From IMG/VR virus record IMGVR_UViG_3300023174_000033, positions 186,001-250,000 of that record: a DNA stretch of 64,000 nt; one strand, 5' to 3'. The position numbers were made by a program, and so were the translations under genes. Positions 3,430-63,937 of this stretch are shown piece by piece (within the stretch, counting starts at the first letter, position 1; each line of letters opens with the position of its first letter). Below the pieces are notes generated by a model. That model searched no databases and had not been told where the DNA came from. It saw nothing but the letters and a program-made list of their open reading frames with translations.

Positions 3430-3792
3430 ATGCGTTTCCAAAAGTTCTATGAATTCATTGCAGAAAAGAATGAAAATGAGTCAAATTACTCTGATGTAAT
3501 ACAAGAGTTGGACTCAATGATTGAGAAGTCTCTTAAAACTTCTGATGAAAAAACCAGAGAAGATTTTATTTCTGCTTATTTAAGAGATTCTGAAAAAAAT
3601 CAGATTGAAGGTTTGATAAATGATTCCGATGTTTATGAATTTTATTTGAAATATCGTAATGAAATAGATCAGAGATTATCAGAACTGAAGTTTTACGAAG
3701 AGAAACCATCTGATATGGATTCTTTCAGTCTTTATGATTATTTAGTAAAGGGTACAAAGAGAGCTATTAAGGATTTTTTAGAATCAAAATAG
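3430..3792 (+). CDS. Hypothetical protein with capsid-targeting-like leader (probable internal head protein)
   Basis: N-terminus MRFQKFYEFIAE closely matches the T4 IPII/IPIII capsid targeting sequence MKTYQEFIAE. Confidence 0.6.
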   Translation: MRFQKFYEFIAEKNENESNYSDVIQELDSMIEKSLKTSDEKTREDFISAYLRDSEKNQIEGLINDSDVYEFYLKYRNEIDQRLSELKFYEEKPSDMDSFSLYDYLVKGTKRAIKDFLESK

Positions 3793-8239: not shown

Positions 8240-8255
8240 TAAATAATTTTTGAAA

Positions 8256-18914: not shown

Positions 18915-21900
18915 ATGTCAACTTACAGTTTAACCCTTAGACAAGATGTGGGAAGGAAATTAACGATTCAAGAACTGGATCATAACTTTCTATATCTTGA
19001 AGATCTCACATCAGAAGGTGGTGGTTCAGTAAATTTACCAAAAGGATATGTGGTCATTGGTGGTGGTCTGACAGGATCAGCAACTGGATCAGAATCGTTC
19101 ACATTTGATAGTACAAAACAAAATATAATAGTTGGTTATAGCTCCAATATTACTGGAACTACATCGTATTCATCTATCGTGGGTGGTACGGATAACACAA
19201 TAGATTTATCTTCTAAATCTGGTATATTTTCTGGTGTTAGTGCTAAAATTTGTAATAATTCAGAAAGGTCTGTAATTATTGGTGGTTCACAAGATAAGAT
19301 TTTAGATTATTCTTGTAGGTCAACTGTTATTGGCGGTTTTAGAAACTGTATTACTGATTTTTCTTGTAATTCTTCTGTAATGGCTGGATGTTGTAATAAA
19401 GTTCAATGTAATTCTTGTAATTCATCTATTATGGGTGGATGTTGCAATACAATTTGTGATAATTCTTGTGCTTCAAGTATAGTAGGGGGATATAGAAACA
19501 CCATCTGTTACGAATCTGATTATTCATCAGTAATTGGTGGGTGTTGTAATAGAATCTGTGATTACTCTGACCACTCAGGTATATTCTCAGGTGGTTGGAA
19601 TAAGATACAATATTCTGACAAATCAGTTGTATTAGGTGGTAATAACAACCACATATGTATTTATTCTGATAGGTCTGGTGTTTTAGCTGGACGATGTAAT
19701 CAAATCATTGGTTTTTCTAATTATTCAACAATTGTGGGTGGATGTTGTAATGGAATAGCTTACTATTCTTGTTCATCAACCATCACTGGTGGTAGTTGTA
19801 ATTTTATTGTTGGTAGAATTGGTGGTCCATCTGCATCTTGTTATGGATCTTGTGATTCATCAATAATTGGTGGGTGTTGTAACCATATTTATGACCAATC
19901 TATGGCTTCTTCAATATTGGGTGGATGTTGTAATTCAATTACTTGTCAAACTTGTAATTCAAGTGTGTTAGGTGGTATATGTAACACAATTACTTGCCAA
20001 AGTTGTAACTCATCAGTTATTGGTGGGTGTTGTAATACTATTTACTATTCAAGTCAATCCACAATAGTTGGTGGTCAATGTAACCAAATCTGTGGATATT
20101 GGGATAGTAATTGTGAACCTAATTATAATTCAATCATTGGTGGTTGTAGAAACTGTATAGTTACTTCTGACTACGCTTCTATTATTGGTGGATATTGTAA
20201 TTGTATAATGGGATATGATGGTGATTACTCATCTATCATTGGTGGTGGTTATAATACCATTTGTTATAACTCACAACATTCTTCTATAGTTGGTGGGCAT
20301 TATAATACAATTTATACTTCTAACTTCTCATCTGTGATTGGTGGATGTTGTAACTGGATTTGTGACTATAGTTGCAGCTCAATAATTGCAGGTGGCCACT
20401 ATAACTACATTTTTAATTCTTGTTGTTCAGCAATGGTTGGTGGATATGAAAGTTGTATCTGTGACGAATCTTGTCTTTCAACTGTTATTGGGGGTTCTAG
20501 AAACTGTGTTATTGACAATTCTTGTGGATCATCTATTTTAGGCGGTAATTGTAATAGAATCTGCTGTTCTAATAATTCTGTAATTATTGGTGGTTCAAAC
20601 TTAACATTAGCTACTCAAAGTAACACAGTTTTAGTTCCCTATCTAAAAATTAATAATTTAGATCAGTGTAACGCTAATACGAAAATCCTAGTCGTTGATA
20701 GTCAAGGTAATGTAAATTACAGAACTGCTGAGTCTTTAGGTGGTGGTGCTTCTCTATATGGAATTAATAATATTTTGACTGATACTACATTTTCAAACAT
20801 ATTGGGTGGTAATGCAAATAGAATAACCTGTGTTTTTTCATCTTCAATATTAGGTGGTTATCAGAACTCTATTTGTTGTTATTCTGATAATTCAACAATA
20901 GTTGGTGGTTCTGCTAACCTAATCAGTGAAAATTCTGATTCTTCAACAATAGTTGGTGGTTATGAGAATTCTATTTGTTGTTTTTCATCCTATTCTTCAG
21001 TAATAGGTGGAGCCAATAACAGAATATGTGATAATTCTTGTCAATCAAGTATAGTAGGTGGTGGTTGTAATGTGATTTATTTTGATTCAGGGTATTCATC
21101 TGTGATTGGTGGGTGTTGTAATAGAATCTGTGATAATTCTTGTAATTCTGGTATATTCTCAGGTGGTTGGAATAAGATACAATATTCTAGTAAATCAGTT
21201 GTATTAGGTGGTAATAATAACCACATATGTTACTATTCAGATAGGTCTGGTATATTAGCTGGTCGTTGTAATCAAATTAAAGATTATTCTTATTATGCAT
21301 CAATCGTTGGTGGTAGATGTAATAAAATTTGTGGAAAGGAATGTCTTTGTGACCCAGGGTTCTTGTATGGTTCCTGTGAATCTACTATAATTGGTGGATG
21401 TTGTAACAGTATTTGCGATACATCTTTTAGGTCATCTATCTTAGGAGGGTCTTGTAACACAATCACTTGTCAAAGTTGTAATTCCACTATTATGGGTGGT
21501 TATGAAAATGATATTAAAGAAAGGTCTAAAAATAGTACCATAATTGGTGGTGGATGTAACACAATTGGTGTTTGTTACACAAATCCAGTTTGTAATTCAG
21601 CTATTATATCTAGTTATGGAAGCTGTATAGAAAACTATACTTGTAATTCAACTATACTAGGTGGTGCTAATAATAAAATTTCTGGTGACTATGTAGTTGG
21701 CCCAACTGGAGATAGATCTAATGGTGATACTGTAATAGGTGGATATCGTAATACAATATGTTATAATTCATGTTACTCATCAATTGTTGGTGGTAGATGT
21801 AACCTAATCTGTGATAATTCTGATTCTTCTTCAATTGTTGGTGGATGTTGTAATAGAGTTTATTGTTCTGATAATTCAACAATCACTGGTGGTTGTTTCA

Positions 21901-24371: not shown

Positions 24372-24384
24372 AATTTGAATAAGT

Positions 24385-25326
24385 ATGATTATTAGTTACA
24401 GAGATTTCATAAAAGAATCATACGGTGGTTTTAAAACTATTGGTGAGTATATCGAAAATTTATCCAAAGATAATGATTATGCTTTGAATATAATTTCTCA
24501 ATATACACAGGACTTCGATCCAAAGGTTCGACTCGCTAATGTGGTTAATACCCTACCAAAGTCAACTCAAGATTTGATTTTGAAATTGATTATAGATGAG
24601 AAATCTGGAAAAGAGGAACCAAAAGATGCTGATGTTATCGCTTATACCAGTGTGAATCTAAATGAGTCCACGACAGTAGTTGGTGGCAAACAAGTATTGC
24701 AATGTTTCCTTAAAGTAATTACAGCTCTTGGTCAAAAGAGTATTTCTTACAATCCAGAGAACACACCAAAAGATTTTATATTTTATTTCGAGACTTCTTT
24801 ACTTCAAGTTGACGATGTGAAGTCGGTGATGAGTAGATATCAATTTTTTGATAAAGTAGTTAATGAAATTGATTATACTTTTAACTTCTGTAATTTATAT
24901 TACGGAATTAAAACTGATGGTAAATTTGAATACGGTATAAAGACGGAAACAGAGATGTTGATAATAGGTCAATTTGATTTGACAGTTGGTGTCTTGAAAT
25001 ATTTACTTTTATTGAATTCGCCTTCAGCTAATGGTTTGAAAAAACAAATAGCGACTCTAAATATGAATCAACTTAAATTACTTGGTAAAATTAAAAACTC
25101 AATGGGAGATTTCAATCCTGGAACTTTCCAAAAGAAAATGAAACCTGTAATTACTGATAATATTATATCATATTCATATCATGATGAAAATATAGATATT
25201 AATGAAATTGAAAACATAAAAAGCAATTTCAAATCCTTTCTTATCCCAAACAGATGGTCGGATAAGGTACAGGTAAGTGTGTCTATAAATGGTAATTATC
25301 TTTTTCTAAATATAAAGATTAAGTAA
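24385..25326 (+). CDS. Hypothetical protein with capsid-targeting-like leader
   Basis: N-terminus MIISYRDFIKE/S and an internal LNES site. Confidence 0.55.
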   Translation: MIISYRDFIKESYGGFKTIGEYIENLSKDNDYALNIISQYTQDFDPKVRLANVVNTLPKSTQDLILKLIIDEKSGKEEPKDADVIAYTSVNLNESTTVVGGKQVLQCFLKVITALGQKSISYNPENTPKDFIFYFETSLLQVDDVKSVMSRYQFFDKVVNEIDYTFNFCNLYYGIKTDGKFEYGIKTETEMLIIGQFDLTVGVLKYLLLLNSPSANGLKKQIATLNMNQLKLLGKIKNSMGDFNPGTFQKKMKPVITDNIISYSYHDENIDINEIENIKSNFKSFLIPNRWSDKVQVSVSINGNYLFLNIKIK

Positions 25327-25328
25327 TC

Positions 25329-27215
25329 TTAATATTTGAAATTCTTGAAAGATTTGAATCTGATAGATTCACCAACTGGCGTACTTCCTAAATTAACACG
25401 ACTCCAATCCATTATTGACTTCACCATCTCTGATTTGTGCTTTTCATCAATGATGTCTGAATTGGTAATATAAGTAATTATATCTCTGGTGAATACCTCA
25501 GGATCCTCCATAGATTTATCCTTCAATCTTTTTAATTGATCAAATATAAATAATACGGAATCAATTTTACCAGCGGCAGCCGCCCATTTTAAAGCCATCC
25601 ATCTTCTTTCAGTTACGATTGTTAATTGTTTTTGTTCAATTGACAATTTATCACCTGGCATGTTATCTGCATATTTAAGTAATAATTTCATTGATTCTAC
25701 ATCTCCCGCTTTCGAAGCTGCTCTGAAAGGATACCCCCTGTCAAAATTCGGGTCTAGACCAGCTTTCAAAAGATATTCAACAGCTTCTGTGTTAGTCGCT
25801 AGATTTCTAAAGACACTTGAATTTAGTGTGGCGCCATGAGAAACCAATAGTTTTACCATTTCCAAATCTTTAGCATATGACACTGCGGTGTCCGCACTAC
25901 TACCATCTGTAATGTTTGGCATTGCCCCCCTCTTTAAAAGGATACTCACAAGTTCTTTGTTATCAGACTTTACTGCATTTTTCAATGGTAATCCACCTCT
26001 TGAATTCGGATCAGCTCCATTTTCCAAGGCCTCTTGGGCTTCTTCAATAGTAATGTTTGTTTCAACAATTTTTCTTGATGCTAGAATCCTTTTTCTTTTT
26101 ATCTCTTGCTCCTCTTTTGACATAGGTCCAAAGACATCCATCGGTAAACCCCAGTCTTTTATTATAGTTTTAAATGAACTTTGAACACTAGCATCCAACT
26201 TGTCATGTGCTGCACTTATATCACCATTTGGTTTTATGGTCATTCCAATTACAGATCTGGAATTAGTTGGATCTAAATTGAAGTTATATACGTAGTATTG
26301 TTTATTGTATTCCTGTAAATAATTATCCCAATAACCCTGGCTTCTAGCAATACAATGAGAGGTGTGACCATTTAATTCTCTATTTGCGATATAAGTAAAT
26401 ACTTCTATCACTAAATATCCATCTTTATCATATACAATTTTTGCACCATTTTGAGGGCCAAATTTGGTATTTACTTCATCAATTTTCTGCATGAATTTAC
26501 TAAATTGGCCGTTGTTTAAAGATTTCAAATAATTTAAGGCATAATCAATAAGTTCATCCAACTTCTTAAAGTCTTTAAGTTTTGAATAGAAAACTCTTTG
26601 AAGAGATTTTTGTGACTTCTCATCAACTTTGCCACTTTCATCTCTCCCCATCTCACCAAAAGCTATACCGATTTCTCTAATCTTTTCCTTTTGTTGATTA
26701 ATTGCCTCATCAATCCATTTCTTTTGATTTGGTAATAATTCGTTATAGAATTTCTTATAAGATTTTTCAAGTAATAATTTATCAATATCATCTGAAATTC
26801 TTTCAGAAATCGGCCTTTGATCGTCATCAGTTGGTTTAATCGCTGCGTATCTATCCAATGCCATAGGTAAATCCTTGACCATAGTTCCTAGTGATTTTAC
26901 TCTGTCGAATAAACTTTGCAATTCAAGAAACTTTTCTTGATCTGAATAATCTTGATTTGGATCTAATTCTTCAAAAAATATTTTGGTAAAAAGAAAGGTA
27001 TATCCTGGCGCATCTTTACACAAATCTTTTATTTTTAAAAACTTTGGATTTGTTTCAGCTGCTCTTACCTCATCGGCGGATAAACTCACAGGTTGATCTG
27101 TCTCACCAGCTTCTGCTTTTTTCTTTTTAAATGCGAGATTTTTTAAATATACTTTAGCTTGTTGGACATTCTCATTTAAGCTATCTTTGAAATCAAAATA
27201 TTTTTTCTGTAACAT
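25329..27215 (-). CDS. Ankyrin-repeat protein with capsid-targeting-like motifs at both termini
   Basis: Ankyrin repeats (GADPN...PLKNAV...ELVSILLKRGA; EMVKLLVSHGA; YLLKAGLDPN...PFRAA). N-terminus KKYFDFKDSLNE, C-terminus GESIRFKSFKNF. Confidence 0.75.
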   Translation of the reverse strand: MLQKKYFDFKDSLNENVQQAKVYLKNLAFKKKKAEAGETDQPVSLSADEVRAAETNPKFLKIKDLCKDAPGYTFLFTKIFFEELDPNQDYSDQEKFLELQSLFDRVKSLGTMVKDLPMALDRYAAIKPTDDDQRPISERISDDIDKLLLEKSYKKFYNELLPNQKKWIDEAINQQKEKIREIGIAFGEMGRDESGKVDEKSQKSLQRVFYSKLKDFKKLDELIDYALNYLKSLNNGQFSKFMQKIDEVNTKFGPQNGAKIVYDKDGYLVIEVFTYIANRELNGHTSHCIARSQGYWDNYLQEYNKQYYVYNFNLDPTNSRSVIGMTIKPNGDISAAHDKLDASVQSSFKTIIKDWGLPMDVFGPMSKEEQEIKRKRILASRKIVETNITIEEAQEALENGADPNSRGGLPLKNAVKSDNKELVSILLKRGAMPNITDGSSADTAVSYAKDLEMVKLLVSHGATLNSSVFRNLATNTEAVEYLLKAGLDPNFDRGYPFRAASKAGDVESMKLLLKYADNMPGDKLSIEQKQLTIVTERRWMALKWAAAAGKIDSVLFIFDQLKRLKDKSMEDPEVFTRDIITYITNSDIIDEKHKSEMVKSIMDWSRVNLGSTPVGESIRFKSFKNFKY

Positions 27216-27224
27216 AAAATCTTA

Positions 27225-28604
27225 TTATTTTAAATATTGGGATAACATTCTTACTTTCTCAAAATCACCAGCATCAATAGCATCATCTATTAACTCTTGG
27301 ATTTCACTCTGTGACATATCTTCAATTGACTTTTCTTTTTGTTGAAGTTGTTGGATTTCAGATGGTTTTTCAGTAGTTCCACCACTTTTTTGTGATTCTT
27401 CCCACTCTTTCATCTTTCTCTCATAATCTTTCATCTCCTCTTCGTATCTCCTCATCTGACCTTCGTAATCTAAATCATTAATCAAGTCATCAATCATAGA
27501 ATCAACTTTAGCTCTAGCTTCTGGTGTTTTTGTTAAAATACCTTTAACCAACTCTAAGAAATCTTTAGTTTCCATTGTTTCTCTGTCTAAAAGAGTTCTG
27601 AAGAATTCTTCTCTGAGATTTGGGATTTCATCAATCCTTTCATTTTCATTTAGAAATGCAGTTAAATCTTTTGCAATTCTTGGACCATATTTCCAATCTT
27701 CAGGCTCATCTGATAAACCAGTATTTATTAATACAGTTTGAGCAACTGATTCTTCTTCTGGAAGACCAGGTGCTGATAATAACTCATAAATACCTTTAAC
27801 GGTCTCATGTAATAACATAGGAAAATCAACACCAACAGCTTTGATAACAGGAGTTGTTTTTAACTCATCCATTTCCATATCAAACATATCATCTTCTGAT
27901 TCATCACCGGTATATTCTTTATATTCTTCCTCTGATTCCTCTTCCTCTTTTGGTTTCCAAGCTACATAAGAAGCTCCAGCAAATCCTTCTGGATTCACTT
28001 CCATCATCGCTGCTCTTTGTTGTGGGTCTGCTAACCAATCTAATTTGTCAGCACTATCCGTCATCCTTTTCCAAATAGTTAAAATCTGTTCCGATTGGTC
28101 GCCAAAAATATCTCTAACACCATCTTGAACGATTGAAGATTCCAATAAATCTTTTATCCCTTTAGCTTTTCCTTGGATGAGTAAGTTAGCAATCTTTCTT
28201 TTGTGAATTTCATCCTTAACATCCTCATCAGTTATTTCTCTGAATGATTCCATATCTGGTTCTGATTCTTCAGCTTCATCCATGAAATTTTTAACTTCTC
28301 TTGGTTTAACAAGTTTAAGGTCAAGTTCTATTTCATATCTTTTTAGTAAGTCTTGGTAGATTGATGTTATCAAATCAGTGGCTAGTTTGGAAAGTTCTTC
28401 CTCTTTACCCTGTGTTAATCTCTGAGACTCTCCTAAATCACGCATGAGTTGCATACCAACTTGCATTTCTTGTCCTCTATCTCCTTGTCTAACACCCATT
28501 CTTTGTTGCTCTTCTCTTTCAATACCTGATTTGTATCCACCAGGCACGGCTGGATTGTCTTCAATCGATGCTTCCTTTAAAAATGTTGTATATTTCTTTA
28601 ACAT
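27225..28604 (-). CDS. Acidic hypothetical protein with capsid-targeting-like leader
   Basis: MLKKYTTFLKE/A, central FPMLLHETVKGIYE motif, C-terminal IDDAIDAGDFEKV. Confidence 0.6.
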   Translation of the reverse strand: MLKKYTTFLKEASIEDNPAVPGGYKSGIEREEQQRMGVRQGDRGQEMQVGMQLMRDLGESQRLTQGKEEELSKLATDLITSIYQDLLKRYEIELDLKLVKPREVKNFMDEAEESEPDMESFREITDEDVKDEIHKRKIANLLIQGKAKGIKDLLESSIVQDGVRDIFGDQSEQILTIWKRMTDSADKLDWLADPQQRAAMMEVNPEGFAGASYVAWKPKEEEESEEEYKEYTGDESEDDMFDMEMDELKTTPVIKAVGVDFPMLLHETVKGIYELLSAPGLPEEESVAQTVLINTGLSDEPEDWKYGPRIAKDLTAFLNENERIDEIPNLREEFFRTLLDRETMETKDFLELVKGILTKTPEARAKVDSMIDDLINDLDYEGQMRRYEEEMKDYERKMKEWEESQKSGGTTEKPSEIQQLQQKEKSIEDMSQSEIQELIDDAIDAGDFEKVRMLSQYLK

Positions 28605-28606
28605 AA

Positions 28607-28849
28607 TTATTTAATATATTTTTCTACAGATTCACCTGCTTTTGACATTTCAGCGATGAAAGTATAAGCTACTTCCTCGGAAAGTTCCTTTTCAGCTTTT
28701 GGACCTGGTTTAACTTTTGGTTCTTTGATAGTTCTATCCTTTCTCTCTGGTTTAACAGGTGCTATTGGCTTAGAAGGAGCGATTTTTGGTTTTGATGGAG
28801 CTATTGTATTCTCTTTTAGGAATTTATGATAAGTTTTGAGACGTTTCAT
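28607..28849 (-). CDS. Small Pro/Lys-rich protein with capsid-targeting-like leader
   Basis: MKRLKTYHKFLKE/N followed by IAPSKP repeats. AATATATA on the minus strand at 28867..28874. Confidence 0.6.
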   Translation of the reverse strand: MKRLKTYHKFLKENTIAPSKPKIAPSKPIAPVKPERKDRTIKEPKVKPGPKAEKELSEEVAYTFIAEMSKAGESVEKYIK

Positions 28850-44073: not shown

Positions 44074-44586
44074 ATGAAACATCTTAAAACTTTTGAATTC
44101 TTCTCCTTTGGTCAACCAGATATGGGTAGAGAAGAAGACGACGATAACGTTTACCTCTCACATGAGTCTGAAGAGGAAATTACTGTACCACCTTTTGGAG
44201 AAGAAGAGGGAGAAGGATGTGAATCCTGTGGTTGTGAAGAATGTGAATGTGGTTCACCAAATTCTGGACAAATGGGATATCCAAATAAATGGTCTGGTGA
44301 AGAAGAGGAGGAGGAAGAAATGATGCCATCTGAAATGGAGATTATGAAATTCGAGGCAAAGAAAACCTCTAAAAAAGCTAAACCAGATTTCTTAGATTTA
44401 GATAAAGATGGTGATAAAAAAGAAACTATGAAGAAAGCTGCTGCTGATAAGAAGAAATCAGAGAAGGGTAAAGATTCAAAAGATGCTAAAAAAGATGAAA
44501 AGGCCCCAAAAGGTAAACTTTCAAAAGCACAGGAAAAACTACCACCGGCTCTAAAAAAGGCAATAGCTCAAGGAGTAAGAGATTAA
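44074..44586 (+). CDS. Low-complexity acidic/basic protein, probable head-internal protein
   Basis: MKHLKTFEFF leader, CESCGCEECEC cluster, KPDFLDLDKDGDKKETMKKAA motif, Lys-rich tail. Promoter at 44042..44049. Confidence 0.6.
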   Translation: MKHLKTFEFFSFGQPDMGREEDDDNVYLSHESEEEITVPPFGEEEGEGCESCGCEECECGSPNSGQMGYPNKWSGEEEEEEEMMPSEMEIMKFEAKKTSKKAKPDFLDLDKDGDKKETMKKAAADKKKSEKGKDSKDAKKDEKAPKGKLSKAQEKLPPALKKAIAQGVRD

Positions 44587-46324: not shown

Positions 46325-46984
46325 ATGAAATATCTCAAGCTTTTTGAAAATTTTGGCACCAATGACACCCTTTATATCTTTGATTTTGATGATACATTGG
46401 TGGATACACCTAGTTTTGAAGAGTTGGCTATACAATATTTGACTGAAAGTCAGAACATTGGAGATTTGATAAAAAGATCTTTACAATTTGTTAATAAAGA
46501 ACAGAAAGACTTGAAGATTGAAAATGGTAGGATATACATTGAAGATCCAAATCAAACTATTGATCCAAAGGGTAATTGGGTTAGAAAGGGGTTGAGAGTT
46601 TATATGGTCACTCCAAACGTTTATCACTTTTTAGATATTTCACTACCGACAAAAGTAAAAGAACTTTCTGAACTATATAAACAAGTCCAAAATAAGTCAA
46701 TTGTAACAGGCAGAATGGTTGACTTGAAAGAAAAAGTAATAGAATCATTGGAAAAATTTGGATTAGAATTACCTAATCATGGTTTGTTTTGTTATCCATC
46801 AAAAGATGATAGAACAGATAGAGTTGCTGAATGGAAAGCTAAAACTATAGTTCAACTTCTAAAAGATACTGGGTTTAAAAAAGCTAAGTTCTATGATGAT
46901 AAACCAAAATGGGTTAAGAAAGTAGTAACAGCAGTAAGAACAGAATTACCAGAGGTTGAATTTGAAGGTATAAGAGTTCATTAA
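46325..46984 (+). CDS. HAD-superfamily phosphatase (RNA-repair-like HAD) with capsid-targeting-like leader
   Basis: FDFDDTL motif I, VTGR motif II, K motif III, FYDD motif IV. N-terminus MKYLKLFENF. Confidence 0.75.
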   Translation: MKYLKLFENFGTNDTLYIFDFDDTLVDTPSFEELAIQYLTESQNIGDLIKRSLQFVNKEQKDLKIENGRIYIEDPNQTIDPKGNWVRKGLRVYMVTPNVYHFLDISLPTKVKELSELYKQVQNKSIVTGRMVDLKEKVIESLEKFGLELPNHGLFCYPSKDDRTDRVAEWKAKTIVQLLKDTGFKKAKFYDDKPKWVKKVVTAVRTELPEVEFEGIRVH

Positions 46985-52870: not shown

Positions 52871-53053
52871 ATGGAAAATATACTCTCATACGAAGATTTC
52901 ATTACAGAAGGATATAACAAACCAAGAAAGGGTATGAAATCTAGATGGTCTGTTAAATACAAGAAGAAGATAAATTGTAGTAGTCCCAATCTTGGATTTT
53001 CACAAAAGCAATATTGTAAAAGAAAGAGAAAGGGTGGAAAATATAAGTCATAA
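52871..53053 (+). CDS. Small basic protein with capsid-targeting-like leader
   Basis: MENILSYEDFITE/G then WS.KYKK.INC..P..GFSQKQYC. Confidence 0.6.
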   Translation: MENILSYEDFITEGYNKPRKGMKSRWSVKYKKKINCSSPNLGFSQKQYCKRKRKGGKYKS

Positions 53054-53474: not shown

Positions 53475-53915
53475 TTAAAAAGGAAGGTCATCATCAAAAT
53501 CAAAACTTTTTTTACCACTACTTTCTTTGTAGTAAAAATCGAATGTAATCAATGGTTTTTTGTCCTTGGTATACCAAAGGTCCACTGCTGGCTCGTATGA
53601 TACGAGTATATCTTTATGGATTTTTTTCATCAATCCAATTAAGGAAGAAAATGTGGAAAATTTTCTATCTTGTTCTAAAATAAACTCCATAACAAAATCT
53701 TTATCATGGACAGTCACAGTGTAATTCTTTACACCAGAGTTCCTAATCATCTGTCTTATGGTGGAAGCTAAATGTTCAAATGCAACCTTCACCTCATCAT
53801 TATCATCTTCTGTCTCTTGACTTTTGGGAGATAATTCCGAATTGAAGTCAAAGTCAAACTCATCATCTGATTCATCATATTTTTCAAAAGTTCTTATGTG
53901 TTTATTCCAATTCAT
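53475..53915 (-). CDS. Hypothetical protein with capsid-targeting-like leader and SSB-like C-terminal tail
   Basis: N-terminus KHIRTFEKY, C-terminus FDFDDDLPF. Confidence 0.55.
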   Translation of the reverse strand: MNWNKHIRTFEKYDESDDEFDFDFNSELSPKSQETEDDNDEVKVAFEHLASTIRQMIRNSGVKNYTVTVHDKDFVMEFILEQDRKFSTFSSLIGLMKKIHKDILVSYEPAVDLWYTKDKKPLITFDFYYKESSGKKSFDFDDDLPF

Positions 53916-58362: not shown

Positions 58363-58941
58363 ATGCTTAATCTAAAAGATAATAATTTTTCCTGTATAAT
58401 TTTTGACTTGAACTATGGGGATCTTCCATCTTCCGACCGACTGAAATTAATGGAAAAGGCGACGAGTATACTCTATTCAAAGGAATTTACTGTTTATGAC
58501 TTATTCAGAACAAATCTAGAAAAAACTGAAAAATCTTTATTTGGGGTATCAGAAAATTTGGATAATGAGTCACTTCGCCGAAATGCAATCTATATTCTTG
58601 AGACATTTCATTTGGAAAAAGTTATGGTCAAATATCTCGGTGAAAATAATTACACCGAGATAAAGTCAGATGGTTCAGAATATAGATTTGAGTTAATAAC
58701 TAATATTTTGGACGAAGGAGTTGATAATTATTTTATCAATGGGTTTACATTTAGATTTGAAAGAATGAAAAGATACAATTACCCAAGACTAAAACAAAAT
58801 TTGAAAGCTGGCATGGTTGTGGAATATCTTGACAATAATAATAGATGGAAACAAAAAACTATCGTAGACTTGGAAAAAGAATACAATAGTCTTTATAGTT
58901 TGTTGATAAAATATAATAAACTGAGGTACGAAGTATATTAA
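58363..58941 (+). CDS. Hypothetical protein
   Basis: Start moved to MLNLKDN (58363), 5 nt after AATATATA at 58350..58357. Confidence 0.5.
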   Translation: MLNLKDNNFSCIIFDLNYGDLPSSDRLKLMEKATSILYSKEFTVYDLFRTNLEKTEKSLFGVSENLDNESLRRNAIYILETFHLEKVMVKYLGENNYTEIKSDGSEYRFELITNILDEGVDNYFINGFTFRFERMKRYNYPRLKQNLKAGMVVEYLDNNNRWKQKTIVDLEKEYNSLYSLLIKYNKLRYEVY

Positions 58942-59681
58942 TACTGGTACTTGTTTAAAAATCCGGATCTCGGAACAGTGGTAGATATATGAGTTTGTAA
59001 ATCACTCATAGGGTTACTATAATGTTCTAATATTTTTGAATTTCTTTCAACTAATCCGTTTTCTGGGAATTCAGGTCTATGAAACATATGGAAAGCATAA
59101 AAATCCATTTGCTTATAGTTTAACATTTTTTTAACTTTCATGTCTTGGAACCGGTTTACAAAACCATGTCCGAGTATATCCTCGTTCCATCCACCAATTT
59201 TTTCTATAGCAGTTCTTTTGAAAATAGATATACCATCCGTAAGATTTATTTTTGGAGAGAATCTTTTTTGAGAAAAAATTGTTTGAATATCATTGCTACT
59301 TTCAGGTGGAGAAAGTTGTACAATATTTGAGGTTGGGATGATACATTCGTGAGACTCTAAAGCTTTTAATGATTCAATTAAATCATTCGGATGCATAATT
59401 ACATCTGCATCACCAAATACCAAAACCGGTGACATAGTTCTTCTGATAGCCACATTGTAAGCCCAAGCTTTATTAAAAGGATATTCACTTTCAACAAAAA
59501 TGTGTCTACATTTTAAAGTTAAGGTATCAATTTTAGAATGTTTGTCTTGTTCTACGACAAGTATTTCAATTCCGTTAAAACCACTCAACCATTCTACTAC
59601 TCTTTTTAAAGCGATTACCCTATCAGGTCTGTATCTGAATGGTATAACATAAGTGAATTTGGGAACAACAGTATTTTTCAT
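58938..59681 (-). CDS. GT-A glycosyltransferase (GT2/GT7 galactosyltransferase-like)
   Basis: VIPFR...R, VVEQ, FNKAWAYN, DAD (DxD), GGWNE...G.G, H..H. Confidence 0.8.
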   Translation of the reverse strand: MKNTVVPKFTYVIPFRYRPDRVIALKRVVEWLSGFNGIEILVVEQDKHSKIDTLTLKCRHIFVESEYPFNKAWAYNVAIRRTMSPVLVFGDADVIMHPNDLIESLKALESHECIIPTSNIVQLSPPESSNDIQTIFSQKRFSPKINLTDGISIFKRTAIEKIGGWNEDILGHGFVNRFQDMKVKKMLNYKQMDFYAFHMFHRPEFPENGLVERNSKILEHYSNPMSDLQTHISTTVPRSGFLNKYQY

Positions 59682-59996: not shown

Positions 59997-61787
59997 TTAG
60001 TTAAGAAGATTCTTGCTATCTACAACGGAGATAGTCATGAATTGCTTCTGTGGATACCAACCAACTTCAGCTACTGCGTATCTTGAACGAAGTAACATTC
60101 TTGGAGCGAAAGTTGCTTCAGAGATAAGGTTGATTGATTGAGCCATTAGATAAGGTACGAAAATGATACCAGGTTGATCAGGATTATTCTTCCTACCAAT
60201 AACAATTCTGTTATCATTATACTTCATAAATGGATCTACATAAATCTGAATATCACCAATTTGACCAACTGGATAGAGTTGACCAGAACCGTTGATTTTA
60301 GATTTGGTTGGGTTAATAGTGTAACCAGCGATATCCATAAGAGCTGCTGCGAGACCTCCATTAGTTACTGCGAATTGAGCAGGTCCAACACGACCCTCAG
60401 TTGCAACGTAGTTAGAAGCATGTACCATTTTAGTGATAAGCTTTCTTTGTACAGCGTGGGTAGTTTCACCAGTAACCGCAGTGCTTGCATATGCGGTGTC
60501 AAGGTCAAAAATAGTGTTAGCTGTAGCACCCGGAGTTCCATATGCAGTCTGTGTTGTCATTAATGGAGCGCTCTTTCTGTTTAGATCACCCATTTCAAAA
60601 ATCTTTGAAACAATTTGCTTGGAGATTGTTTGAGATAGTTCATTCACAAGAATAGATTCCATTTTCTGAACGATGTCCATACCGGTGTTAGCTTTGATGT
60701 CTTCAATTTCAGTCCTTCTAAGAGCAGAAGATACTTCGATAGTACCAACAGCAATTGATTTGGAGGAAATTTTAGGACCGATATTACCAGGATAAGTAGC
60801 ATCATCGTCACTTCTCTTCATTGGATAAGAACCAGCAGCATTTTTGGTATCATCTGGACCACCAGCCCAGTTAGATGAGAAACCAGGGATATGATCTTCA
60901 AGAGCAGAAATTAGTTCAATGTTGGTAGCAGTGATTGACTGTGTTCCAATACATTTAATTTGTTGGAGCATTGAAGATGTAGCACTAGTGAAAGTATTTT
61001 GACTAGGATCAAAAGTATAAGCATATGATGGAGAGTTCACTCTTTCAGAATTAGCTTGTCTGTAAGCTCTGAAAATTGGATATCCATCAATACGAGAGAA
61101 TCCTAAAAATTCTGCAGCACCTCCATAAACTGGATTAGTAACCGAACCAGGATCGGTCTGACTAATTTGTCCTAAACCAGCAGTACTAACTCCAGTACCC
61201 CAGAAATTAGCAGCAGAACCAGTAGCTAATGTTAGCCACATTCTACCACCCTGAAGACCATCAGCAGTTTCTCTTATACCATAAGAGGTAAGGAAAGTAC
61301 GTAGGTGAGCTTCTACTTGATCAGTTGTTAAACCAGTTGAAGCTGTGAGTTTGAATACTTGAGGACGACCAGTTGATCCACCGTTAGCAACATCATCATA
61401 TTGGAAGTCAATATAAAGAAGGTCTAATTTTGGTCCTGGTGAAGGTTTTACAGCTACAAGGTCAAGACCGATAGTTTGAGCAGCAATCTTCATAGCAACT
61501 GGAAGAAGGTTTTGGCCTAAATCTCCAGAACCGAAGTTACCTCTATTGTCATAACTTGTACTAGTTTGTGTTGTTTGGTTAAAACCAGGGTATGCAGATG
61601 GTTGTGGTGAAAGTACACTACCCATACCAGCGATGGTAGCGTTTGCGTAAGCATTTTCATTGATTGAGTGGTACTCCGCATATTCTGACATCCAATCTAG
61701 TCTATCTTCGCCCTCAACACCCATGTTTTCTAAAACAGGTGACCACTTTTTAAGTGCTTTCTGTTTGTCAATTCTAATGTGTGACAT
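59997..61787 (-). CDS. gp23: Major capsid protein, T4 gp23-like
   Basis: KKWSPVLE N-terminus, probable maturation site SINE/N, DLVAVKP..GP, EDIKA..G.D, G..FVPY, TFAPR...RSRY. Flanked by a promoter (61813..61820) and a terminator, downstream of the prohead protease. Confidence 0.88.
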   Translation of the reverse strand: MSHIRIDKQKALKKWSPVLENMGVEGEDRLDWMSEYAEYHSINENAYANATIAGMGSVLSPQPSAYPGFNQTTQTSTSYDNRGNFGSGDLGQNLLPVAMKIAAQTIGLDLVAVKPSPGPKLDLLYIDFQYDDVANGGSTGRPQVFKLTASTGLTTDQVEAHLRTFLTSYGIRETADGLQGGRMWLTLATGSAANFWGTGVSTAGLGQISQTDPGSVTNPVYGGAAEFLGFSRIDGYPIFRAYRQANSERVNSPSYAYTFDPSQNTFTSATSSMLQQIKCIGTQSITATNIELISALEDHIPGFSSNWAGGPDDTKNAAGSYPMKRSDDDATYPGNIGPKISSKSIAVGTIEVSSALRRTEIEDIKANTGMDIVQKMESILVNELSQTISKQIVSKIFEMGDLNRKSAPLMTTQTAYGTPGATANTIFDLDTAYASTAVTGETTHAVQRKLITKMVHASNYVATEGRVGPAQFAVTNGGLAAALMDIAGYTINPTKSKINGSGQLYPVGQIGDIQIYVDPFMKYNDNRIVIGRKNNPDQPGIIFVPYLMAQSINLISEATFAPRMLLRSRYAVAEVGWYPQKQFMTISVVDSKNLLN

Positions 61788-61864: not shown

Positions 61865-63937
61865 TTATAGATTTTTGAATCTTTCTAAAATTGATTTCAT
61901 TTCATTGTCTGCTAACTTATCTTCTTGTATAACAGGATCCATTGAAACTAATTTCTTTGTACCGGATTCTTTTTTCTTGAGACTTCTAGTCATCCAAAAA
62001 TGTTCAATGTTAGCCTCGGAAGTTAATTCCGGATATAGCCTAGCTTGAGACATGATTGATTTTTTAGAAGACTCATTGAGTTGGGACCAGATTGGCTTTA
62101 TGTTTTCGGGCATCAATCTAATCAATCTTTCTTCTAGGGTTTCATCCTTAGTTGAAAGAGATTCTTGTATTAGTCTTAAAACGTCAGACTGTGAGAAGTA
62201 ACTTTTTTCGTTTATATAAAGTTTAACTTGCTCTTGCTCATCAATTGATAGATTATAAAAATCATCAGATTGACGCTTGCTTAAGAATTTCAAAAAATGC
62301 ATTTCATTTGTTTCGGAAACTTTACGCTTGGTTGCTTCCTGAATTAATTTATCAATTTGCTTGGATAAGTCAGTGTCAGAATTTTTCTCATATGTATGAG
62401 CTTCCTCTTCTTCTTCAGAACTCCAAGCCTCCTTTTCTTCTTCACTTTCTTCGGCCATATCCATATCGGTTGGGTCCATTTCCATGTTGTTGGTTTCCTC
62501 TTCCTCTGTAGCCATCAAATGTGGTAATTCTTCCTCTTCACTTTCTTCAACTTCCATAGGATTCATTTCAAATCCCATTTCCTCTAAAGTTGGAAGTGGT
62601 TTTTGAGATTTACTTTCATTGATTTTACCAGAATTCAAATGCTCGGAAATCATACCAGTGTAAGAAACTGCCTTATCTAAATTTTCAGCAATATACTCTG
62701 AATAAGCGATGTTGTCATCTAGGTGTTCAGCAATATACTCTGAATAAGCAATATTACCCTCAATGTGTTCAGCTAAATACTCTGCATATGCAATTGAGTT
62801 ATCTAGGTGTTCAGCAATGTACTCGGAGTAAGAAATACCTCTATCTAAATTTTCAGCGATATATTCTGAATAAGCAATGTTCTTATCTAAATTTTCAGCG
62901 ATATATTCTGAATAAGCAATGTTCTTATCTAAATTTTCAGCAAGATACTCAGAGTAAGAAATATTCTTATCAAGGTTCTCGGCTAGGTATTCAGAATAGT
63001 CAATATTCTTATCAAGGTTCTCGGCTAAATATTCTGTATAGTTGATAGCCTTCTCTAGGTTTTCAGCTAAATAATCATTATGAGAAATTAATTTCTGTGC
63101 AGTGGATTTCAAATTAGAATTTTCATTTACTACTAATTGTACCTTTTCAGCTAAATAATCAAGATATTTAACGATTTGAGAATTAGTACTATTTAGTTCC
63201 TCATAGTATTCTAAAAGTTGCTCTAATTTCTTTGGATTAATACTACCGCTCTTTACAGCACTTTTTACTTGATTTTTAGTGGTAGATATCTCATTGATGA
63301 GATATTTTGAATAATCCGTCAGTTGTTGTTTGGTAACGAATTCGCTCTTGTTCATATTGAATATATCATTTATTTTGGACTCATCGGACATTTCATATAT
63401 CCTAAAGTTAGCTTTGCCTGAATAGTTTAGAGACTCATTTATTGAACTCATTTTAGCTGACGCGAATCCTGGATCGGCAACAATATCATATGTGAATAAT
63501 TTCTTCAAAGTTACTGTTCCGTCGGCCTCAGTCACACCAGCTGCTCTTGAAGATACAAATACTGGACAGTTATCCTCAACTAGAGCTTTTGCTTCTTTTC
63601 CCCAATAAGTATTGAGTAATTTGATTTGACCCTCAACTCTGTTAGCTTCTTTCACAAATTTTACATTACGTACAATGTGTGAAGATCTAGATAAAGAGGT
63701 GTCAAAAACATCAGGGTGATCAAATTCACCGTATACAACACCCATTGTGTTAATTCTTTCATTTAGTTCCTGTAAACATGGAATAAATTTTTCAGCAGTA
63801 TAAATTCTTTCATTGCGGTTTTTTTTATCAAACTCTGTGAAAATACCCCCTAAAACATACTCCTTTTTACCGTTTTGATTGCTAATACTCTCCTTCAAAG
63901 GATTGGTATTATTTTCAACGATCAAGATTGGTTTCAT
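61865..63937 (-). CDS. gp21: Prohead core protease (T4 gp21-like) fused to a coiled-coil scaffold region
   Basis: GIF......NRNERIY, GEFDHP, VSSRAAG, YDIVADPGF..A, followed by 14-aa repeats and an acidic tract. Confidence 0.88.
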   Translation of the reverse strand: MKPILIVENNTNPLKESISNQNGKKEYVLGGIFTEFDKKNRNERIYTAEKFIPCLQELNERINTMGVVYGEFDHPDVFDTSLSRSSHIVRNVKFVKEANRVEGQIKLLNTYWGKEAKALVEDNCPVFVSSRAAGVTEADGTVTLKKLFTYDIVADPGFASAKMSSINESLNYSGKANFRIYEMSDESKINDIFNMNKSEFVTKQQLTDYSKYLINEISTTKNQVKSAVKSGSINPKKLEQLLEYYEELNSTNSQIVKYLDYLAEKVQLVVNENSNLKSTAQKLISHNDYLAENLEKAINYTEYLAENLDKNIDYSEYLAENLDKNISYSEYLAENLDKNIAYSEYIAENLDKNIAYSEYIAENLDRGISYSEYIAEHLDNSIAYAEYLAEHIEGNIAYSEYIAEHLDDNIAYSEYIAENLDKAVSYTGMISEHLNSGKINESKSQKPLPTLEEMGFEMNPMEVEESEEEELPHLMATEEEETNNMEMDPTDMDMAEESEEEKEAWSSEEEEEAHTYEKNSDTDLSKQIDKLIQEATKRKVSETNEMHFLKFLSKRQSDDFYNLSIDEQEQVKLYINEKSYFSQSDVLRLIQESLSTKDETLEERLIRLMPENIKPIWSQLNESSKKSIMSQARLYPELTSEANIEHFWMTRSLKKKESGTKKLVSMDPVIQEDKLADNEMKSILERFKNL
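62663..63082 (-). repeat. Ten tandem 42-bp repeats encoding YSEY(I/L)AE(N/H)LDKNIA
   Basis: 420 nt = 10 x 42, read from both the translation and the DNA. Confidence 0.9.

What the first reader, a model, noticed from the sequence alone, without database searches (positions are those of the whole stretch)
62663..63082. The scaffold is a tandem array of the capsid-targeting motif itself
Seen: ten 14-aa (two-heptad) repeats with core Y-S-E-Y-(I/L)-A-E are fused behind the protease. This is nearly the T4 targeting core Y-Q-E-F-I-A-E and the leader of the 3430 protein (F-Y-E-F-I-A-E). Every repeat contains an (I/L)-x-E site, and INES/LNES/LKES sites punctuate the rest of the protein. Known: T4 encodes protease (gp21) and scaffold (gp22) separately, and gp21 destroys the core at such sites. 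Inference: cargo leaders may be scaffold-repeat mimics that zip into the coiled-coil core, which offers a mechanism for targeting. Repeat number might scale with head size or cargo load.
Basis: partly seen in the sequence, partly recalled or inferred. Interest (0 to 1): 0.68.

Follow-up and report, generated by a model that had tools for sequence, protein, structure and literature searches.

The report
Self-cleaving scaffold repeats resemble cargo tags
In a 465-kb uncultured giant phage, the head scaffold is fused to the head protease and contains about eleven 14-residue helical repeats; each repeat carries the aromatic-pair-plus-cleavage-site signature that also begins dozens of the phage's other proteins, which suggests, without proving, how cargo is loaded into the head.

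Summary
Window 61865-63937 (-) encodes a 690-aa protein with four parts: a T4 gp21-type prohead protease domain, a predicted 200-residue helix, an acidic disordered stretch and a conserved C-terminal domain. Residues 286-439 are eleven in-phase 14-aa units. Nine are perfect Y-x-E-Y-[IL]-A-E, and every unit has an [IL]-x-E site.

The family is large. Copy number varies from 6 to 13, and both Tyr, the Ala and the Glu are invariant.

The repeat shares four positions with N-terminal leaders: aromatic P7, aromatic P4, aliphatic P3 and Glu P1. Such leaders occur on 17 genes here and on 23-62 genes in four related megaphages (p <= 1e-7 each). They sit at chance level in two relatives whose scaffold lacks the array.

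In T4, the two aromatic positions are the published targeting determinants. Three conserved predicted cleavage sites here lack them, so the cleavage consensus alone does not explain the match.

Several points weigh against strict mimicry. The near-identity to the 3430 leader is incidental, because its Ala at P2 occurs in only 1 of 120 orthologues. Leaders prefer Phe where the scaffold always has Tyr. T4 gp22 has no such array. The co-fold gave no verdict.

Direct leader-repeat binding therefore remains an attractive, untested hypothesis.

The parts
61865..63937 (-). Gene for the 690-aa prohead protease-scaffold fusion protein
   Evidence: ORF. PHROG 207 head maturation protease, E 1e-29. More than 3,500 homologues and 243 50%-identity cluster representatives at E<1e-30.
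63434..63937 (-). Protease domain, aa 1-168 (T4 gp21 / Peptidase S77 type)
   Evidence: AF2 pLDDT >90 for aa 25-165. Best Foldseek match is T4 gp21, PDB 5JBL, E 9e-7, TM 0.65. BLASTP to gp21 gives E 1e-5 across GEFDHP/GELNHP. H74, S129 and R131 are invariant in 69 homologues.
63914..63922 (-). Predicted N-terminal autoprocessing site I-V-E8|N
   Evidence: Glu in 66 of 69 and Ile at P3 in 61 of 69 homologues. It occupies the same place as L-I-E9 of T4 gp21. It has no aromatic residue at P4 or P7.
63434..63442 (-). Predicted release site I166-N-E168|S between protease and scaffold
   Evidence: Glu in 69 of 69, Asn in 60 of 69, V/I/L at P3 in 67 of 69 and Ser at P1' in 62 of 69 homologues. It has no aromatic residue at P4 or P7. 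AF2 confidence drops at aa 167-172.
62633..63235 (-). Predicted single continuous alpha-helix, aa 235-435 (about 30 nm if straight)
   Evidence: AF2 with a 69-sequence alignment: DSSP helix 235-435, pLDDT 60-80. The length in nm is an inference from 1.5 A per residue.
63125..63166 (-). Isolated in-phase unit Y-L-D-Y-L-A-E..., aa 258-271
   Evidence: It is conserved as the first unit in nearly all close homologues.
62621..63082 (-). Tandem array of eleven 14-aa units, aa 286-439; nine are perfect Y-x-E-Y-[IL]-A-E-x-[LI]-x-x-x-[IV]-x
   Evidence: The end units are orthologously conserved and the middle units vary in number. Family-wide the period is 14 or 28 aa in 121 of 136 representatives.
62378..62620 (-). 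Acidic, disordered linker, aa 440-520 (38% Asp+Glu)
   Evidence: Composition. AF2 pLDDT 30-40 with no secondary structure.
61868..62377 (-). Conserved helical C-terminal domain, aa 521-690, with candidate cleavage sites before the last helix
   Evidence: AF2 pLDDT about 88 for aa 550-650. The domain is conserved even in Lak-A1 and Tenacibaculum phage PTm1. P610, F647 and W648 are nearly invariant.
59997..61787 (-). Major capsid protein (gp23 family), immediately downstream
   Evidence: Pfam Gp23, E 6e-27. BLASTP to T4 gp23 gives E 8e-8, and the N-terminal K-W-x-P-x-L-E motif is shared. The propeptide site S-I-N-E|N is shared with PTm1.
3430..3465 (+). Leader MRFQKFYEFIAE of the 120-aa protein at 3430-3792
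   Evidence: 109 of 120 orthologues carry a leader of this class. AF2 predicts a short helix at aa 6-13, then a low-confidence linker at aa 11-17, then a helical body.
24385..24417 (+). Leader MIISYRDFIKE of the 313-aa protein
28572..28604 (-). Leader MLKKYTTFLKE of the 459-aa protein
   Evidence: Orthologues in two relatives keep the pattern but not the sequence.
28811..28849 (-). Leader MKRLKTYHKFLKE of the 80-aa protein
52871..52909 (+). Leader MENILSYEDFITE of the 60-aa protein

Best explanation
**Shown.** The gene encodes a T4 gp21-type prohead protease fused to its own scaffold. The scaffold part is one long predicted helix. It consists largely of 14-residue repeats, each with an invariant Tyr-x-x-Tyr pair immediately upstream of an [IL]-A-Glu site.

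**Inferred processing.** After the shell has formed, the protease frees itself at two family-invariant sites (I-x-E8 and [VIL]-N-E168|S). It then cuts after the Glu of every unit. This would turn the roughly 30-nm helix into 14-mers small enough to leave the head.

**Shown for the leaders.** The same four-position signature (aromatic P7, aromatic P4, aliphatic P3, Glu P1) begins 17 other genes in this genome and 23-62 genes in related megaphages. It is also the architecture of the T4 capsid-targeting sequence.

**Inferred mechanism.** The aromatic pair is the element that holds a polypeptide in the prohead core, and the [IL]-x-E is its release site. Cargo proteins carry one copy of the module that the scaffold carries in tandem. 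The simplest implementation is that a leader helix packs onto the Tyr face of the scaffold helix in place of a neighbouring repeat, and is cut loose by the same protease.

**Likelihoods.**
- Anatomy and self-destruction: about 0.85.
- Shared core-association module: about 0.6.
- Direct leader-on-repeat packing: about 0.35.
For: **Protease.**
- PHROG 207, E 1e-29.
- The best structural match is T4 gp21, PDB 5JBL.
- The catalytic His and Ser are invariant.
- The next gene downstream is a gp23-type capsid protein.

**Helix and repeats.**
-.
- In 120 close homologues Y1, Y4, A6 and E7 are invariant, and copy number is 6-13.
- The 14-aa period persists down to about 30% identity.
- Synonymous codon variation at the invariant residues points to protein-level selection.

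**Cleavage logic.**
- There are 31 [IL]-x-E sites against about 15 expected.
- E8 and E168 are conserved in 66 of 69 and 69 of 69 homologues.

**Leaders.**
- N-terminal enrichment gives p = 1e-7, 3e-9, 1e-8, 4e-11 and 2e-35 in five array-bearing genomes. The reversed-motif control sits at chance.
- Within one orthologous family only P7, P4, P3 and P1 are constrained.
- The leader is predicted as a short helix separated from the body by a flexible linker.
- The leaders tag unrelated domains, including LRR, PPK2, methyltransferase and PNK phosphatase.

**T4.**
- Targeting maps to CTS residues 4 and 7, and processing to residues 8 and 10. Internal proteins co-purify with gp22 (PMC9026906).
- The partner of the CTS is still unknown (PMC9958956).
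- The aromatic pair is absent from the conserved autoprocessing and MCP sites.

**Comparative.**
- Array-less Lak-A1 and PTm1 have such leaders only at chance level.
- A 207-aa protein of LR756501 carries three scaffold-type units behind a Gly/Ser linker, as if the unit were a portable module.
Against: - There is no direct evidence of binding. The co-fold of two repeat helices with the 3430 protein gave no verdict.
- Leaders prefer Phe at P4 (65-91%), whereas the scaffold has Tyr in about 100% of units. The scaffold's Glu at P5 and Ala at P2 are not shared by leaders: Ala at P2 occurs in 1 of 120 orthologues.
- Leaders have a further hydrophobic position at P10/P11, while the repeat has one at P9/P13.
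- A second, interchangeable leader class (MK[YH][LI]KxFExF, 39 genes here) keeps the aromatic pair but often lacks an [IL]-x-E in register.
- T4 gp22 has no array, only one K-E-W-L-A-E-N, and is not significantly similar to the scaffold part (E 1.3).
- The co-occurrence of array and leaders rests on one clade against two outgroups.
- These phages are uncultured, so neither cleavage nor packaging has been observed.
Confidence: 0.5

Rival explanations
1. Common third partner. The repeats and the leaders do not touch each other. Both dock by their aromatic pair onto the same other surface, for example the inner face or N-terminal arm of the capsid protein, the scaffold's conserved C-terminal domain, or an exosite on the protease domain.
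For: T4 gp23 has its own aromatic-pair site (F-G-S-F-L-T-E|A) at its propeptide cleavage point, so shell and cargo share the motif in T4. Leaders and repeats differ at P2, P5 and upstream of P7, as expected if each only has to fit a common pocket. T4 gp22 has no array, yet the CTS works there. Lak-A1 has abundant leaders of another kind but no repeat helix in its fusion protein.
Against: In this phage the MCP propeptide site lacks the aromatic pair. The review of T4 work reports co-purification of internal proteins with gp22, not with gp23. No candidate pocket has been identified.
Confidence: 0.2
2. Extended protease specificity. The aromatic residues at P4 and P7 are simply preferred by the protease's S4 and S7 subsites for fast cleavage. 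On this reading, repeats and leaders resemble each other only because both are good substrates.
For: Every repeat and every class-1 leader places the pair at a fixed distance from an [ILV]-x-E site. The T4 gp23 maturation site also has the pair.
Against: The two most conserved predicted sites in the protease-scaffold family (E8 and E168), and the MCP site shared with PTm1, lack aromatics at P4 and P7. In T4, changes at CTS residues 4 and 7 affected targeting, while residues 8 and 10 governed processing (PMC9026906). Class-2 leaders keep the pair without an in-register site and can replace class-1 leaders on the same protein.
Confidence: 0.12
3. Coincidence of two amphipathic helices. Any helical scaffold needs hydrophobic residues at i, i+3 and i+4 and must carry cleavage sites. 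On this reading the use of aromatic residues is chance or a lineage habit, with no functional link to the leaders.
For: The repeat units are copies of one ancestral unit, so the resemblance is effectively a single draw. About 1.5% of internal [ILVM]-x-E sites have the pair by chance. The extra identities with the 3430 leader are incidental.
Against: Tyr at both positions is invariant in more than 1,300 units, and the positions stay aromatic or His in distant relatives, far more constrained than ordinary core positions. The leader class co-occurs with the array in five of five genomes and is at chance in two of two without it.
Confidence: 0.13
4. The leaders are not capsid-targeting signals at all. 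They could be another kind of N-terminal tag, for example for a different compartment, for turnover or for translation, so the comparison with the scaffold is beside the point.
For: Together, the two leader classes mark 37 to 102 genes per genome (6-11% of called genes), including enzymes such as a DnaB-like helicase domain and PPK2. That is many for head cargo. No proteomics exists for these phages.
Against: The architecture matches the T4 CTS position for position, in phages that have gp21- and gp23-type head genes. Glu at P1 is present in 109 of 109 leaders in one orthologous family. Selection acts on amino acids at codons 6-12, which a translation signal would not require.
Confidence: 0.1

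Closest known systems
Phage T4 prohead core: gp21 protease, gp22 scaffold and the capsid-targeting sequence (CTS) of internal proteins IPII/IPIII
   Same: The protease has the gp21 fold with the catalytic His and Ser. The capsid protein is of the gp23 type. The scaffold is acidic, helical and full of [IL]-x-E sites. The leaders are short N-terminal tags with aromatic P7, aromatic P4, [IL] at P3 and Glu at P1, as in MKTYQEFIAE.
   Different: In T4, protease and scaffold are separate genes. gp22 has no tandem array and no significant similarity to the scaffold part here. In the T4 genome only the two IPII/IPIII starts matched the CTS pattern, against 17-62 class-1 leaders per megaphage genome, plus a second leader class.
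Herpesvirus assemblin-scaffold fusion (UL26 with nested UL26.5) and phage fusions such as lambda C/Nu3 and P2 gpO. The arrangement of these is from established knowledge and was not tested here.
   Same: One ORF carries an N-terminal capsid-maturation protease of the same fold class; herpesvirus proteases are the next-best structural matches. A scaffold follows, with a predicted release site between the two and candidate sites near the C-terminus.
   Different: The protease belongs to the gp21 (S77) branch. The scaffold is a 14-residue tandem array. Whether a nested scaffold-only product is made from an internal start was not tested.
Tenacibaculum phage PTm1 ORF-300, 'prohead core scaffolding protein and protease' (AP019524, a cultured 225-kb phage)
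   Same: The protease and the C-terminal domain are homologous. The gene order is the same, ahead of a gp23-type capsid protein, and the MCP propeptide site I-N-E|N is shared.
   Different: The middle region has different, Trp-containing repeats (E-x-W-[IL]...K-E-L-S-E). Its genome shows no enrichment of aromatic-pair leaders: 2 found against 1.9 expected.
phiKZ/SPN3US-type giant phages: gp21-like protease (gp175/gp245) and long propeptides on head proteins
   Same: A diverged gp21-like protease cuts after Glu, many head and ejection proteins carry propeptides, and no gp22 counterpart has been confirmed (PMC9026906 and PMC5694885).
   Different: The motif there is S/A-x-E with propeptides often longer than 100 residues. 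Here the leaders are 10-13 residues of the T4 type, and a clear scaffold is fused to the protease.

Membership tests
T4 gp21-type prohead protease (MEROPS/Pfam Peptidase_S77) | Sequence match to the family profile | tested here: met
   PHROG 207 head maturation protease, E 1e-29. Pfam PF03420 scores only 19.1 bits, below the 27-bit cut-off, for this copy, but is precomputed on many close homologues. BLASTP to T4 gp21 gives E 1e-5.
T4 gp21-type prohead protease (MEROPS/Pfam Peptidase_S77) | gp21/herpesvirus assemblin fold | tested here: met
   The AF2 domain at aa 25-165 has pLDDT >90. The top three Foldseek hits are chains of T4 gp21, PDB 5JBL (E 9e-7 to 3e-6, TM 0.61-0.69), followed by herpesvirus proteases.
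T4 gp21-type prohead protease (MEROPS/Pfam Peptidase_S77) | Catalytic His and Ser conserved (His85 and Ser140 in T4 numbering) | tested here: met
   GEFDH74P aligns with GELNH85P. V-S129-S-R-A-A-G corresponds to V-S140-S-R-G-L-G in the T4 sequence. H74, S129, R131 and G134 are invariant in 69 homologues. The assignment of these residues as catalytic is from established knowledge.
T4 gp21-type prohead protease (MEROPS/Pfam Peptidase_S77) | Cleaves after Glu in [L/I]-x-E | not testable with these tools
   Only indirect evidence is available: the conserved [ILV]-x-E sites at E8 and E168, and one such site in every repeat.
T4 gp22 scaffold family | Sequence homology to gp22 | tested here: not met
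   BLASTP of aa 201-690 against T4 gp22 finds only E-Y-L-A-E-N / E-W-L-A-E-N, E 1.3. The protein works like gp22 but is not shown to be a member of that family.
T4-type capsid-targeting sequence (applied to the leaders) | N-terminal 10-13 residues with aromatic, x, x, aromatic, [IL], x, Glu on otherwise unrelated proteins | tested here: met
   The T4 reference sequence was confirmed in the T4 genome. The tagged proteins have diverse domains.
T4-type capsid-targeting sequence (applied to the leaders) | Necessary and sufficient for packaging into the prohead, and removed by the protease | not testable with these tools
   The phages are uncultured, and no proteomic data were examined.
Protease-scaffold fusion (herpes UL26 / lambda C-Nu3 type arrangement) | Protease and scaffold in one reading frame with a release site between them | tested here: met
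   A single ORF without stops. The architecture is conserved in hundreds of representatives. The [VIL]-N-E168|S site is invariant at the domain boundary; that it is a cleavage site is an inference.
Protease-scaffold fusion (herpes UL26 / lambda C-Nu3 type arrangement) | Nested in-frame scaffold-only product from an internal start | not tested
   Conserved Met codons exist near aa 183-195, but no ribosome-binding rule or expression data were applied.
Classical heptad coiled coil | Hydrophobic residues at a and d of every heptad, and an oligomeric state | tested here: inconclusive
   AF2 gives a single long helix for the monomer. Only the first heptad of each unit has an a/d/e hydrophobic face. 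The second heptad's hydrophobic moment points about 110 degrees away (28 against 137 degrees). The oligomer was not modelled successfully.

The most novel reading that the evidence does not exclude
Capsid targeting in T4-like heads is co-polymerisation with the scaffold. The CTS-type leader is a single-heptad copy of the scaffold's own repeat, and it docks on the tyrosine face of the scaffold helix. The fused protease then dissolves scaffold and tether in one step. On this reading the tandem array is the long-sought CTS receptor, its copy number tunes head size and cargo capacity, and 6-11% of megaphage genes encode proteins loaded into the head in this way.
Probability: 0.3. Interest if true: 0.82.

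Novelty: new variant of a known kind. Interest (0 to 1): 0.62.

Why it matters
How the T4 capsid-targeting sequence finds the prohead core has been open since 1996. A 2023 review still calls the mechanism 'mysterious' and the core structure unresolved.

This family offers a concrete, testable candidate. Its scaffold displays ten or more copies of the two residues that T4 genetics identified as the targeting determinants. It is fused to the protease that would release everything.

The comparison also shows that uncultured megaphages carry dozens of genes with T4-type leaders. This points to a very large packaged or ejected proteome.

If the docking rule holds, it would give a simple way to predict head cargo from sequence. 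It would also help in designing protein-loading tags for phage-derived capsids.

If it does not hold, the finding is still a clear description of a widespread, previously unannotated protease-scaffold architecture with variable repeat number.

Tried and rejected
- **Co-fold.** I co-folded two copies of the repeat region (aa 286-439) with the whole 3430 protein. The score was 0.00 and the verdict was 'no answer', so it is no evidence either way.
- **Homology to T4 gp22.** BLASTP of the scaffold part against gp22 was not significant (E 1.3), so homology to gp22 is not claimed.
- **Weak Pfam hits.** LTI65_PGEED, PSCyt2 and DUF7603 all score below their cut-offs and lie on the repeats. I treated them as spurious.
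- **Unbiased enrichment test.** Positional enrichment at all N-terminal [ILVM]-x-E sites was too noisy to reveal the leader class.
- **N-terminus clustering.** A first clustering script timed out. The numpy version worked, but single-linkage clusters chain together (for example 264 genes in LR756501). I therefore used regex counts instead.
- **Covariation test in distant relatives.** These have variant repeats such as F-T-E-x-V-A-G or T-Q-K-F-A-E. One contig had no DNA available. The others gave only 8-21 neighbouring genes, with no clear leaders, which is too few to judge.
- **A repeat matching Lak's own leaders.** I looked in Lak-A1 for a protein that repeats its own leader motif and found none.
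- **Electrostatic complementarity.** I dropped the idea that basic leaders fit an acidic repeat, because LR756500 leaders are net acidic.
- **Antisense ORF.** The 85-aa ORF at 62788-63045 (+) is an artefact of the repeat.
- **Literature.** Searches found no description of this array or of megaphage leaders.
- **Genetic code.** Lak-A1 was read with TAG=Gln, in a script only. Its genome supports this: coding density rises from 0.70 to 0.91, and there is an in-frame TAG in its capsid gene.
Full report
**What is there**

Window 61865-63937 on the minus strand is a 690-aa ORF, followed directly by a 596-aa gene. The downstream gene is a gp23-family major capsid protein (MCP): Pfam gives E 6e-27 and BLASTP to T4 gp23 gives E 8e-8, with a shared N-terminal K-W-x-P-x-L-E motif.

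The 690-aa protein starts with a prohead protease:
- It matches PHROG 207 at E 1e-29.
- It has a weak Pfam Peptidase_S77 hit, below the cut-off.
- BLASTP to T4 gp21 gives E 1e-5 across the catalytic-His motif.
- His74, Ser129, Arg131 and Gly134 are invariant in 69 homologues.
- An AF2 model has pLDDT above 90 for aa 25-165. Its best PDB matches are the three chains of T4 gp21 (5JBL, E about 1e-6, TM 0.61-0.69), then herpesvirus proteases.

Behind the protease, AF2 predicts the following:
- one continuous helix from aa 235 to 435 (pLDDT 60-80);
- a disordered stretch at aa 438-521, which is 38% Asp+Glu;
- a confident helical C-terminal domain.

**Checking the observation**

- Nine units are perfect Y-[STA]-E-Y-[IL]-A-E followed by x-[LI]-x-x-x-[IV]-x.
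- The first unit in the range, and an eleventh just outside it, are degenerate.
- One more in-phase copy sits 28 residues upstream.

Tandem Repeats Finder sees the 42-nt period. The DNA units are only 60-88% identical, and the invariant residues use both synonymous codons, so the peptide is what is conserved.

Every unit carries an [IL]-x-E site.

The strict motif is otherwise found in the 464,605-bp genome only at the N-terminus of the 3430 protein, plus one probable chance hit.

**The family**

The genome is a single 465-kb contig with 32% G+C. Its closest GenBank relatives are uncultured megaphages of 462-735 kb (LR756500-LR756504 and LR745206). A paper in the library places two of them in a freshwater lake and a subsurface sample (PMC9723777). 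All of them have the same fusion and the same array.

In the large protein collections the family is very big:
- More than 3,500 hits were found. The best 120 are at least 63% identical.
- There are 243 50%-identity cluster representatives at E<1e-30.

Among the 120 close homologues the perfect tandem run has 6 to 13 units, with a mode of 10. Y1, Y4, A6 and E7 are invariant in more than 1,300 units. The terminal units are orthologous, and the number of middle units varies. A 14- or 28-residue period persists in 121 of 136 full-length representatives, down to about 30% identity. In the most distant members the second aromatic residue or the Glu can be lost.

Two relatives outside this clade have a different middle region:
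- Tenacibaculum phage PTm1, a cultured phage, has a homologous 'prohead core scaffolding protein and protease'. Its middle region carries different, Trp-containing repeats.
- Lak-A1 has the protease, an acidic region and the C-terminal domain, but no repeat helix.

**Predicted processing**

Two sites in the family alignment are almost invariant:
- I-[LVI]-E8|, at the position of the L-I-E9 self-cleavage motif of T4 gp21;
- [VIL]-N-E168|S, exactly at the end of the protease domain, with Glu in 69 of 69 sequences.

The MCP has S-I-N-E|N where T4 gp23 is matured, and PTm1 has T-I-N-E|N at the same place. None of these three sites has aromatic residues at P4 or P7.

From this I infer the following sequence. 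The protease frees itself, and then cuts after each repeat Glu. This reduces a helix about 30 nm long (201 residues at 1.5 A per residue) to 14-mers.

**The leaders**

I searched the first 21 residues of all called genes for aromatic-x-x-aromatic-[ILVM]-x-E.
- This genome has 17 such genes, against 3.8 expected if the motif were evenly spread (p = 1e-7). Five lie in the window.
- I fetched four relatives whole and found 23, 27, 31 and 62 such genes (p between 3e-9 and 2e-35). The reversed motif is not enriched.
- The Glu usually lies 11-13 residues from the Met.

Within the family of the 3430 protein, 109 of 120 orthologues have such a leader, and only four positions are constrained:
- P7 is Tyr 56, Phe 52, Trp 1.
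- P4 is Phe 94, Tyr 15.
- P3 is Ile, Val or Leu.
- P1 is Glu in 109 of 109.

P2 is Ala only in the window's copy. The striking F-Y-E-F-I-A-E is therefore an incidental extreme of a looser pattern.

AF2 predicts that leader as a short helix, followed by a low-confidence linker and a helical body. The leaders tag unrelated domains: LRR, PPK2, a metallopeptidase, a methyltransferase, PNK phosphatase and a DnaB-like domain.

A second leader class, MK[YH][LI]KxFExF, marks 39 genes here. It replaces class 1 on some orthologues of the 3430 protein, so the two classes appear interchangeable.

**Does the resemblance mean anything?**

The T4 CTS is confirmed in the T4 genome as two exact MKTYQEFIAE starts. 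A review of the T4 work states that targeting depends mainly on CTS residues 4 and 7, which are the two aromatics at P7 and P4. Processing depends on residues 8 and 10, which are P3 and P1. The same review states that internal proteins co-purify with gp22 (PMC9026906). Another review says the localisation mechanism remains mysterious (PMC9958956).

The repeat therefore carries both the 'targeting' pair and the 'processing' pair, whereas the conserved autoprocessing and MCP sites carry only the latter.

Several further observations bear on the link:
- Only about 1.5% of internal [ILVM]-x-E sites have the aromatic pair.
- Aromatic-pair leaders are enriched in all five genomes with the array. They are at chance in PTm1 (2 found, 1.9 expected) and in Lak-A1 (2 found, 3.0 expected), which lack it.
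- Lak-A1 has leader families of its own, without the pair.
- In LR756501 a 207-aa protein carries three scaffold-type units behind a Gly/Ser linker, which suggests the unit is a portable module.

**What speaks against strict mimicry**

- Leaders prefer Phe at P4, while the scaffold never deviates from Tyr.
- The scaffold's Glu at P5 and Ala at P2 are not shared by leaders.
- The next hydrophobic position upstream is P10/P11 in leaders but P9/P13 in the repeat.
- Only the first heptad of each unit has an a/d/e hydrophobic face. The second heptad's hydrophobic moment points about 110 degrees away, so the helix is two-faced rather than a textbook coiled coil.
- T4 gp22 has no array. It has only one K-E-W-L-A-E-N, and no significant similarity to the scaffold part.
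- The co-occurrence rests on one clade against two outgroups.
- The one co-fold allowed gave no verdict and is not evidence either way.

**Repeat number and size**

Counting in-phase units from the first Y-L-D-Y-L-A-E to the last degenerate unit gives 12-16 units for genomes or contigs of 462-770 kb. The Spearman correlation is 0.71 (p = 0.03, n = 9), or 0.85 for the six GenBank genomes.

The range is narrow and the points are related by descent. Close homologues of unknown genome size range from 6 to 13 perfect units. Leader counts (both classes: 53, 37, 51, 102 and 67) do not track unit number closely.

**Conclusion**

The feature is a real, widespread and, as far as the searched literature shows, undescribed variant of a known arrangement. 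It is a gp21-type protease fused to a self-destructing helical scaffold built from 14-residue units.

The units share with a large class of T4-type leaders exactly the positions that T4 genetics ties to targeting and to processing. I consider a shared core-association module likely (about 0.6). Direct packing of leaders on the repeats is the single most likely implementation (about 0.35). A common third partner, protease subsite preference and coincidence are live rivals.

Noticed in passing
window 44074-44103 (+), 46325-46354 (+), 53475-53915 (-); genome-wide in G000: A second conserved N-terminal leader, MK[YH][LI]KxFExF, begins 39 genes of this genome and 28-73 genes in three relatives, but only 6 in LR756501. 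It keeps an aromatic pair at i and i+3 but often lacks an in-register [IL]-x-E. It replaces the class-1 leader on some orthologues of the 3430 protein.
   Followed up: partly
LR756501 (W04) 619760-620383 (+): A 207-aa protein has three scaffold-type 14-aa units (Y-A-E-Y-L-A-E-Q-I-D-K-S-I-N and two more) after a Gly/Ser-rich linker. It is a non-scaffold protein that carries the repeat itself.
   Followed up: no
LR756501 (W04) 21458-26533 (-): A 1,691-aa protein has seven repeats of about 58-61 aa, each containing F-V-K-Y-[IL]-[AI]-E.
   Followed up: no
Lak-A1 (MK250016), whole genome: Lak-A1 has its own conserved N-terminal leader families, such as ...KKALYE[SN]IM..ISK.VK and MNKNIK.L[LIV]ESLFDDD. 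Both contain L-x-E|S, and neither has the aromatic pair. Its protease fusion lacks the repeat helix.
   Followed up: partly
G000 genome-wide (for example starts at 434, 47795, 390512): A cluster of about 21 genes has signal-peptide or lipoprotein-like N-termini (hydrophobic core followed by Cys, or by ...FGQ/FSQ). This suggests exported phage proteins.
   Followed up: no
window 61650-61787 (-), MCP aa 1-46: The MCP propeptide contains W-M-S-E-Y-A-E-Y just before the predicted S-I-N-E|N site. W-M-S-E is shared with PTm1, and the N-terminal K-W-x-P-x-L-E with T4 gp23.
   Followed up: partly
T4 (L006) gp22 aa 94-101 and gp23 aa 59-65: T4 gp22 has one K-E-W-L-A-E-N that resembles the repeat core. 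The T4 gp23 maturation site F-G-S-F-L-T-E|A has the same aromatic P7/P4 pattern as the CTS.
   Followed up: partly
window 58938-59681 (-): A 247-aa protein next to the capsid gene matches a galactosyl-transferase PHROG, E 4e-14.
   Followed up: no
window 62788-63045 (+): An 85-aa antisense ORF lies inside the array. It is itself repetitive, and I consider it an artefact of the repeat.
   Followed up: yes
window 18915-24371 (+), 8250-12128 (+), 1-3414 (+): Very long ORFs of 1,818, 1,292 and at least 1,137 aa were not examined.
   Followed up: no
metagenome contig of P0258: In a distant relative, a ribosomal protein S21 homologue is encoded immediately upstream of the protease-scaffold gene.
   Followed up: no
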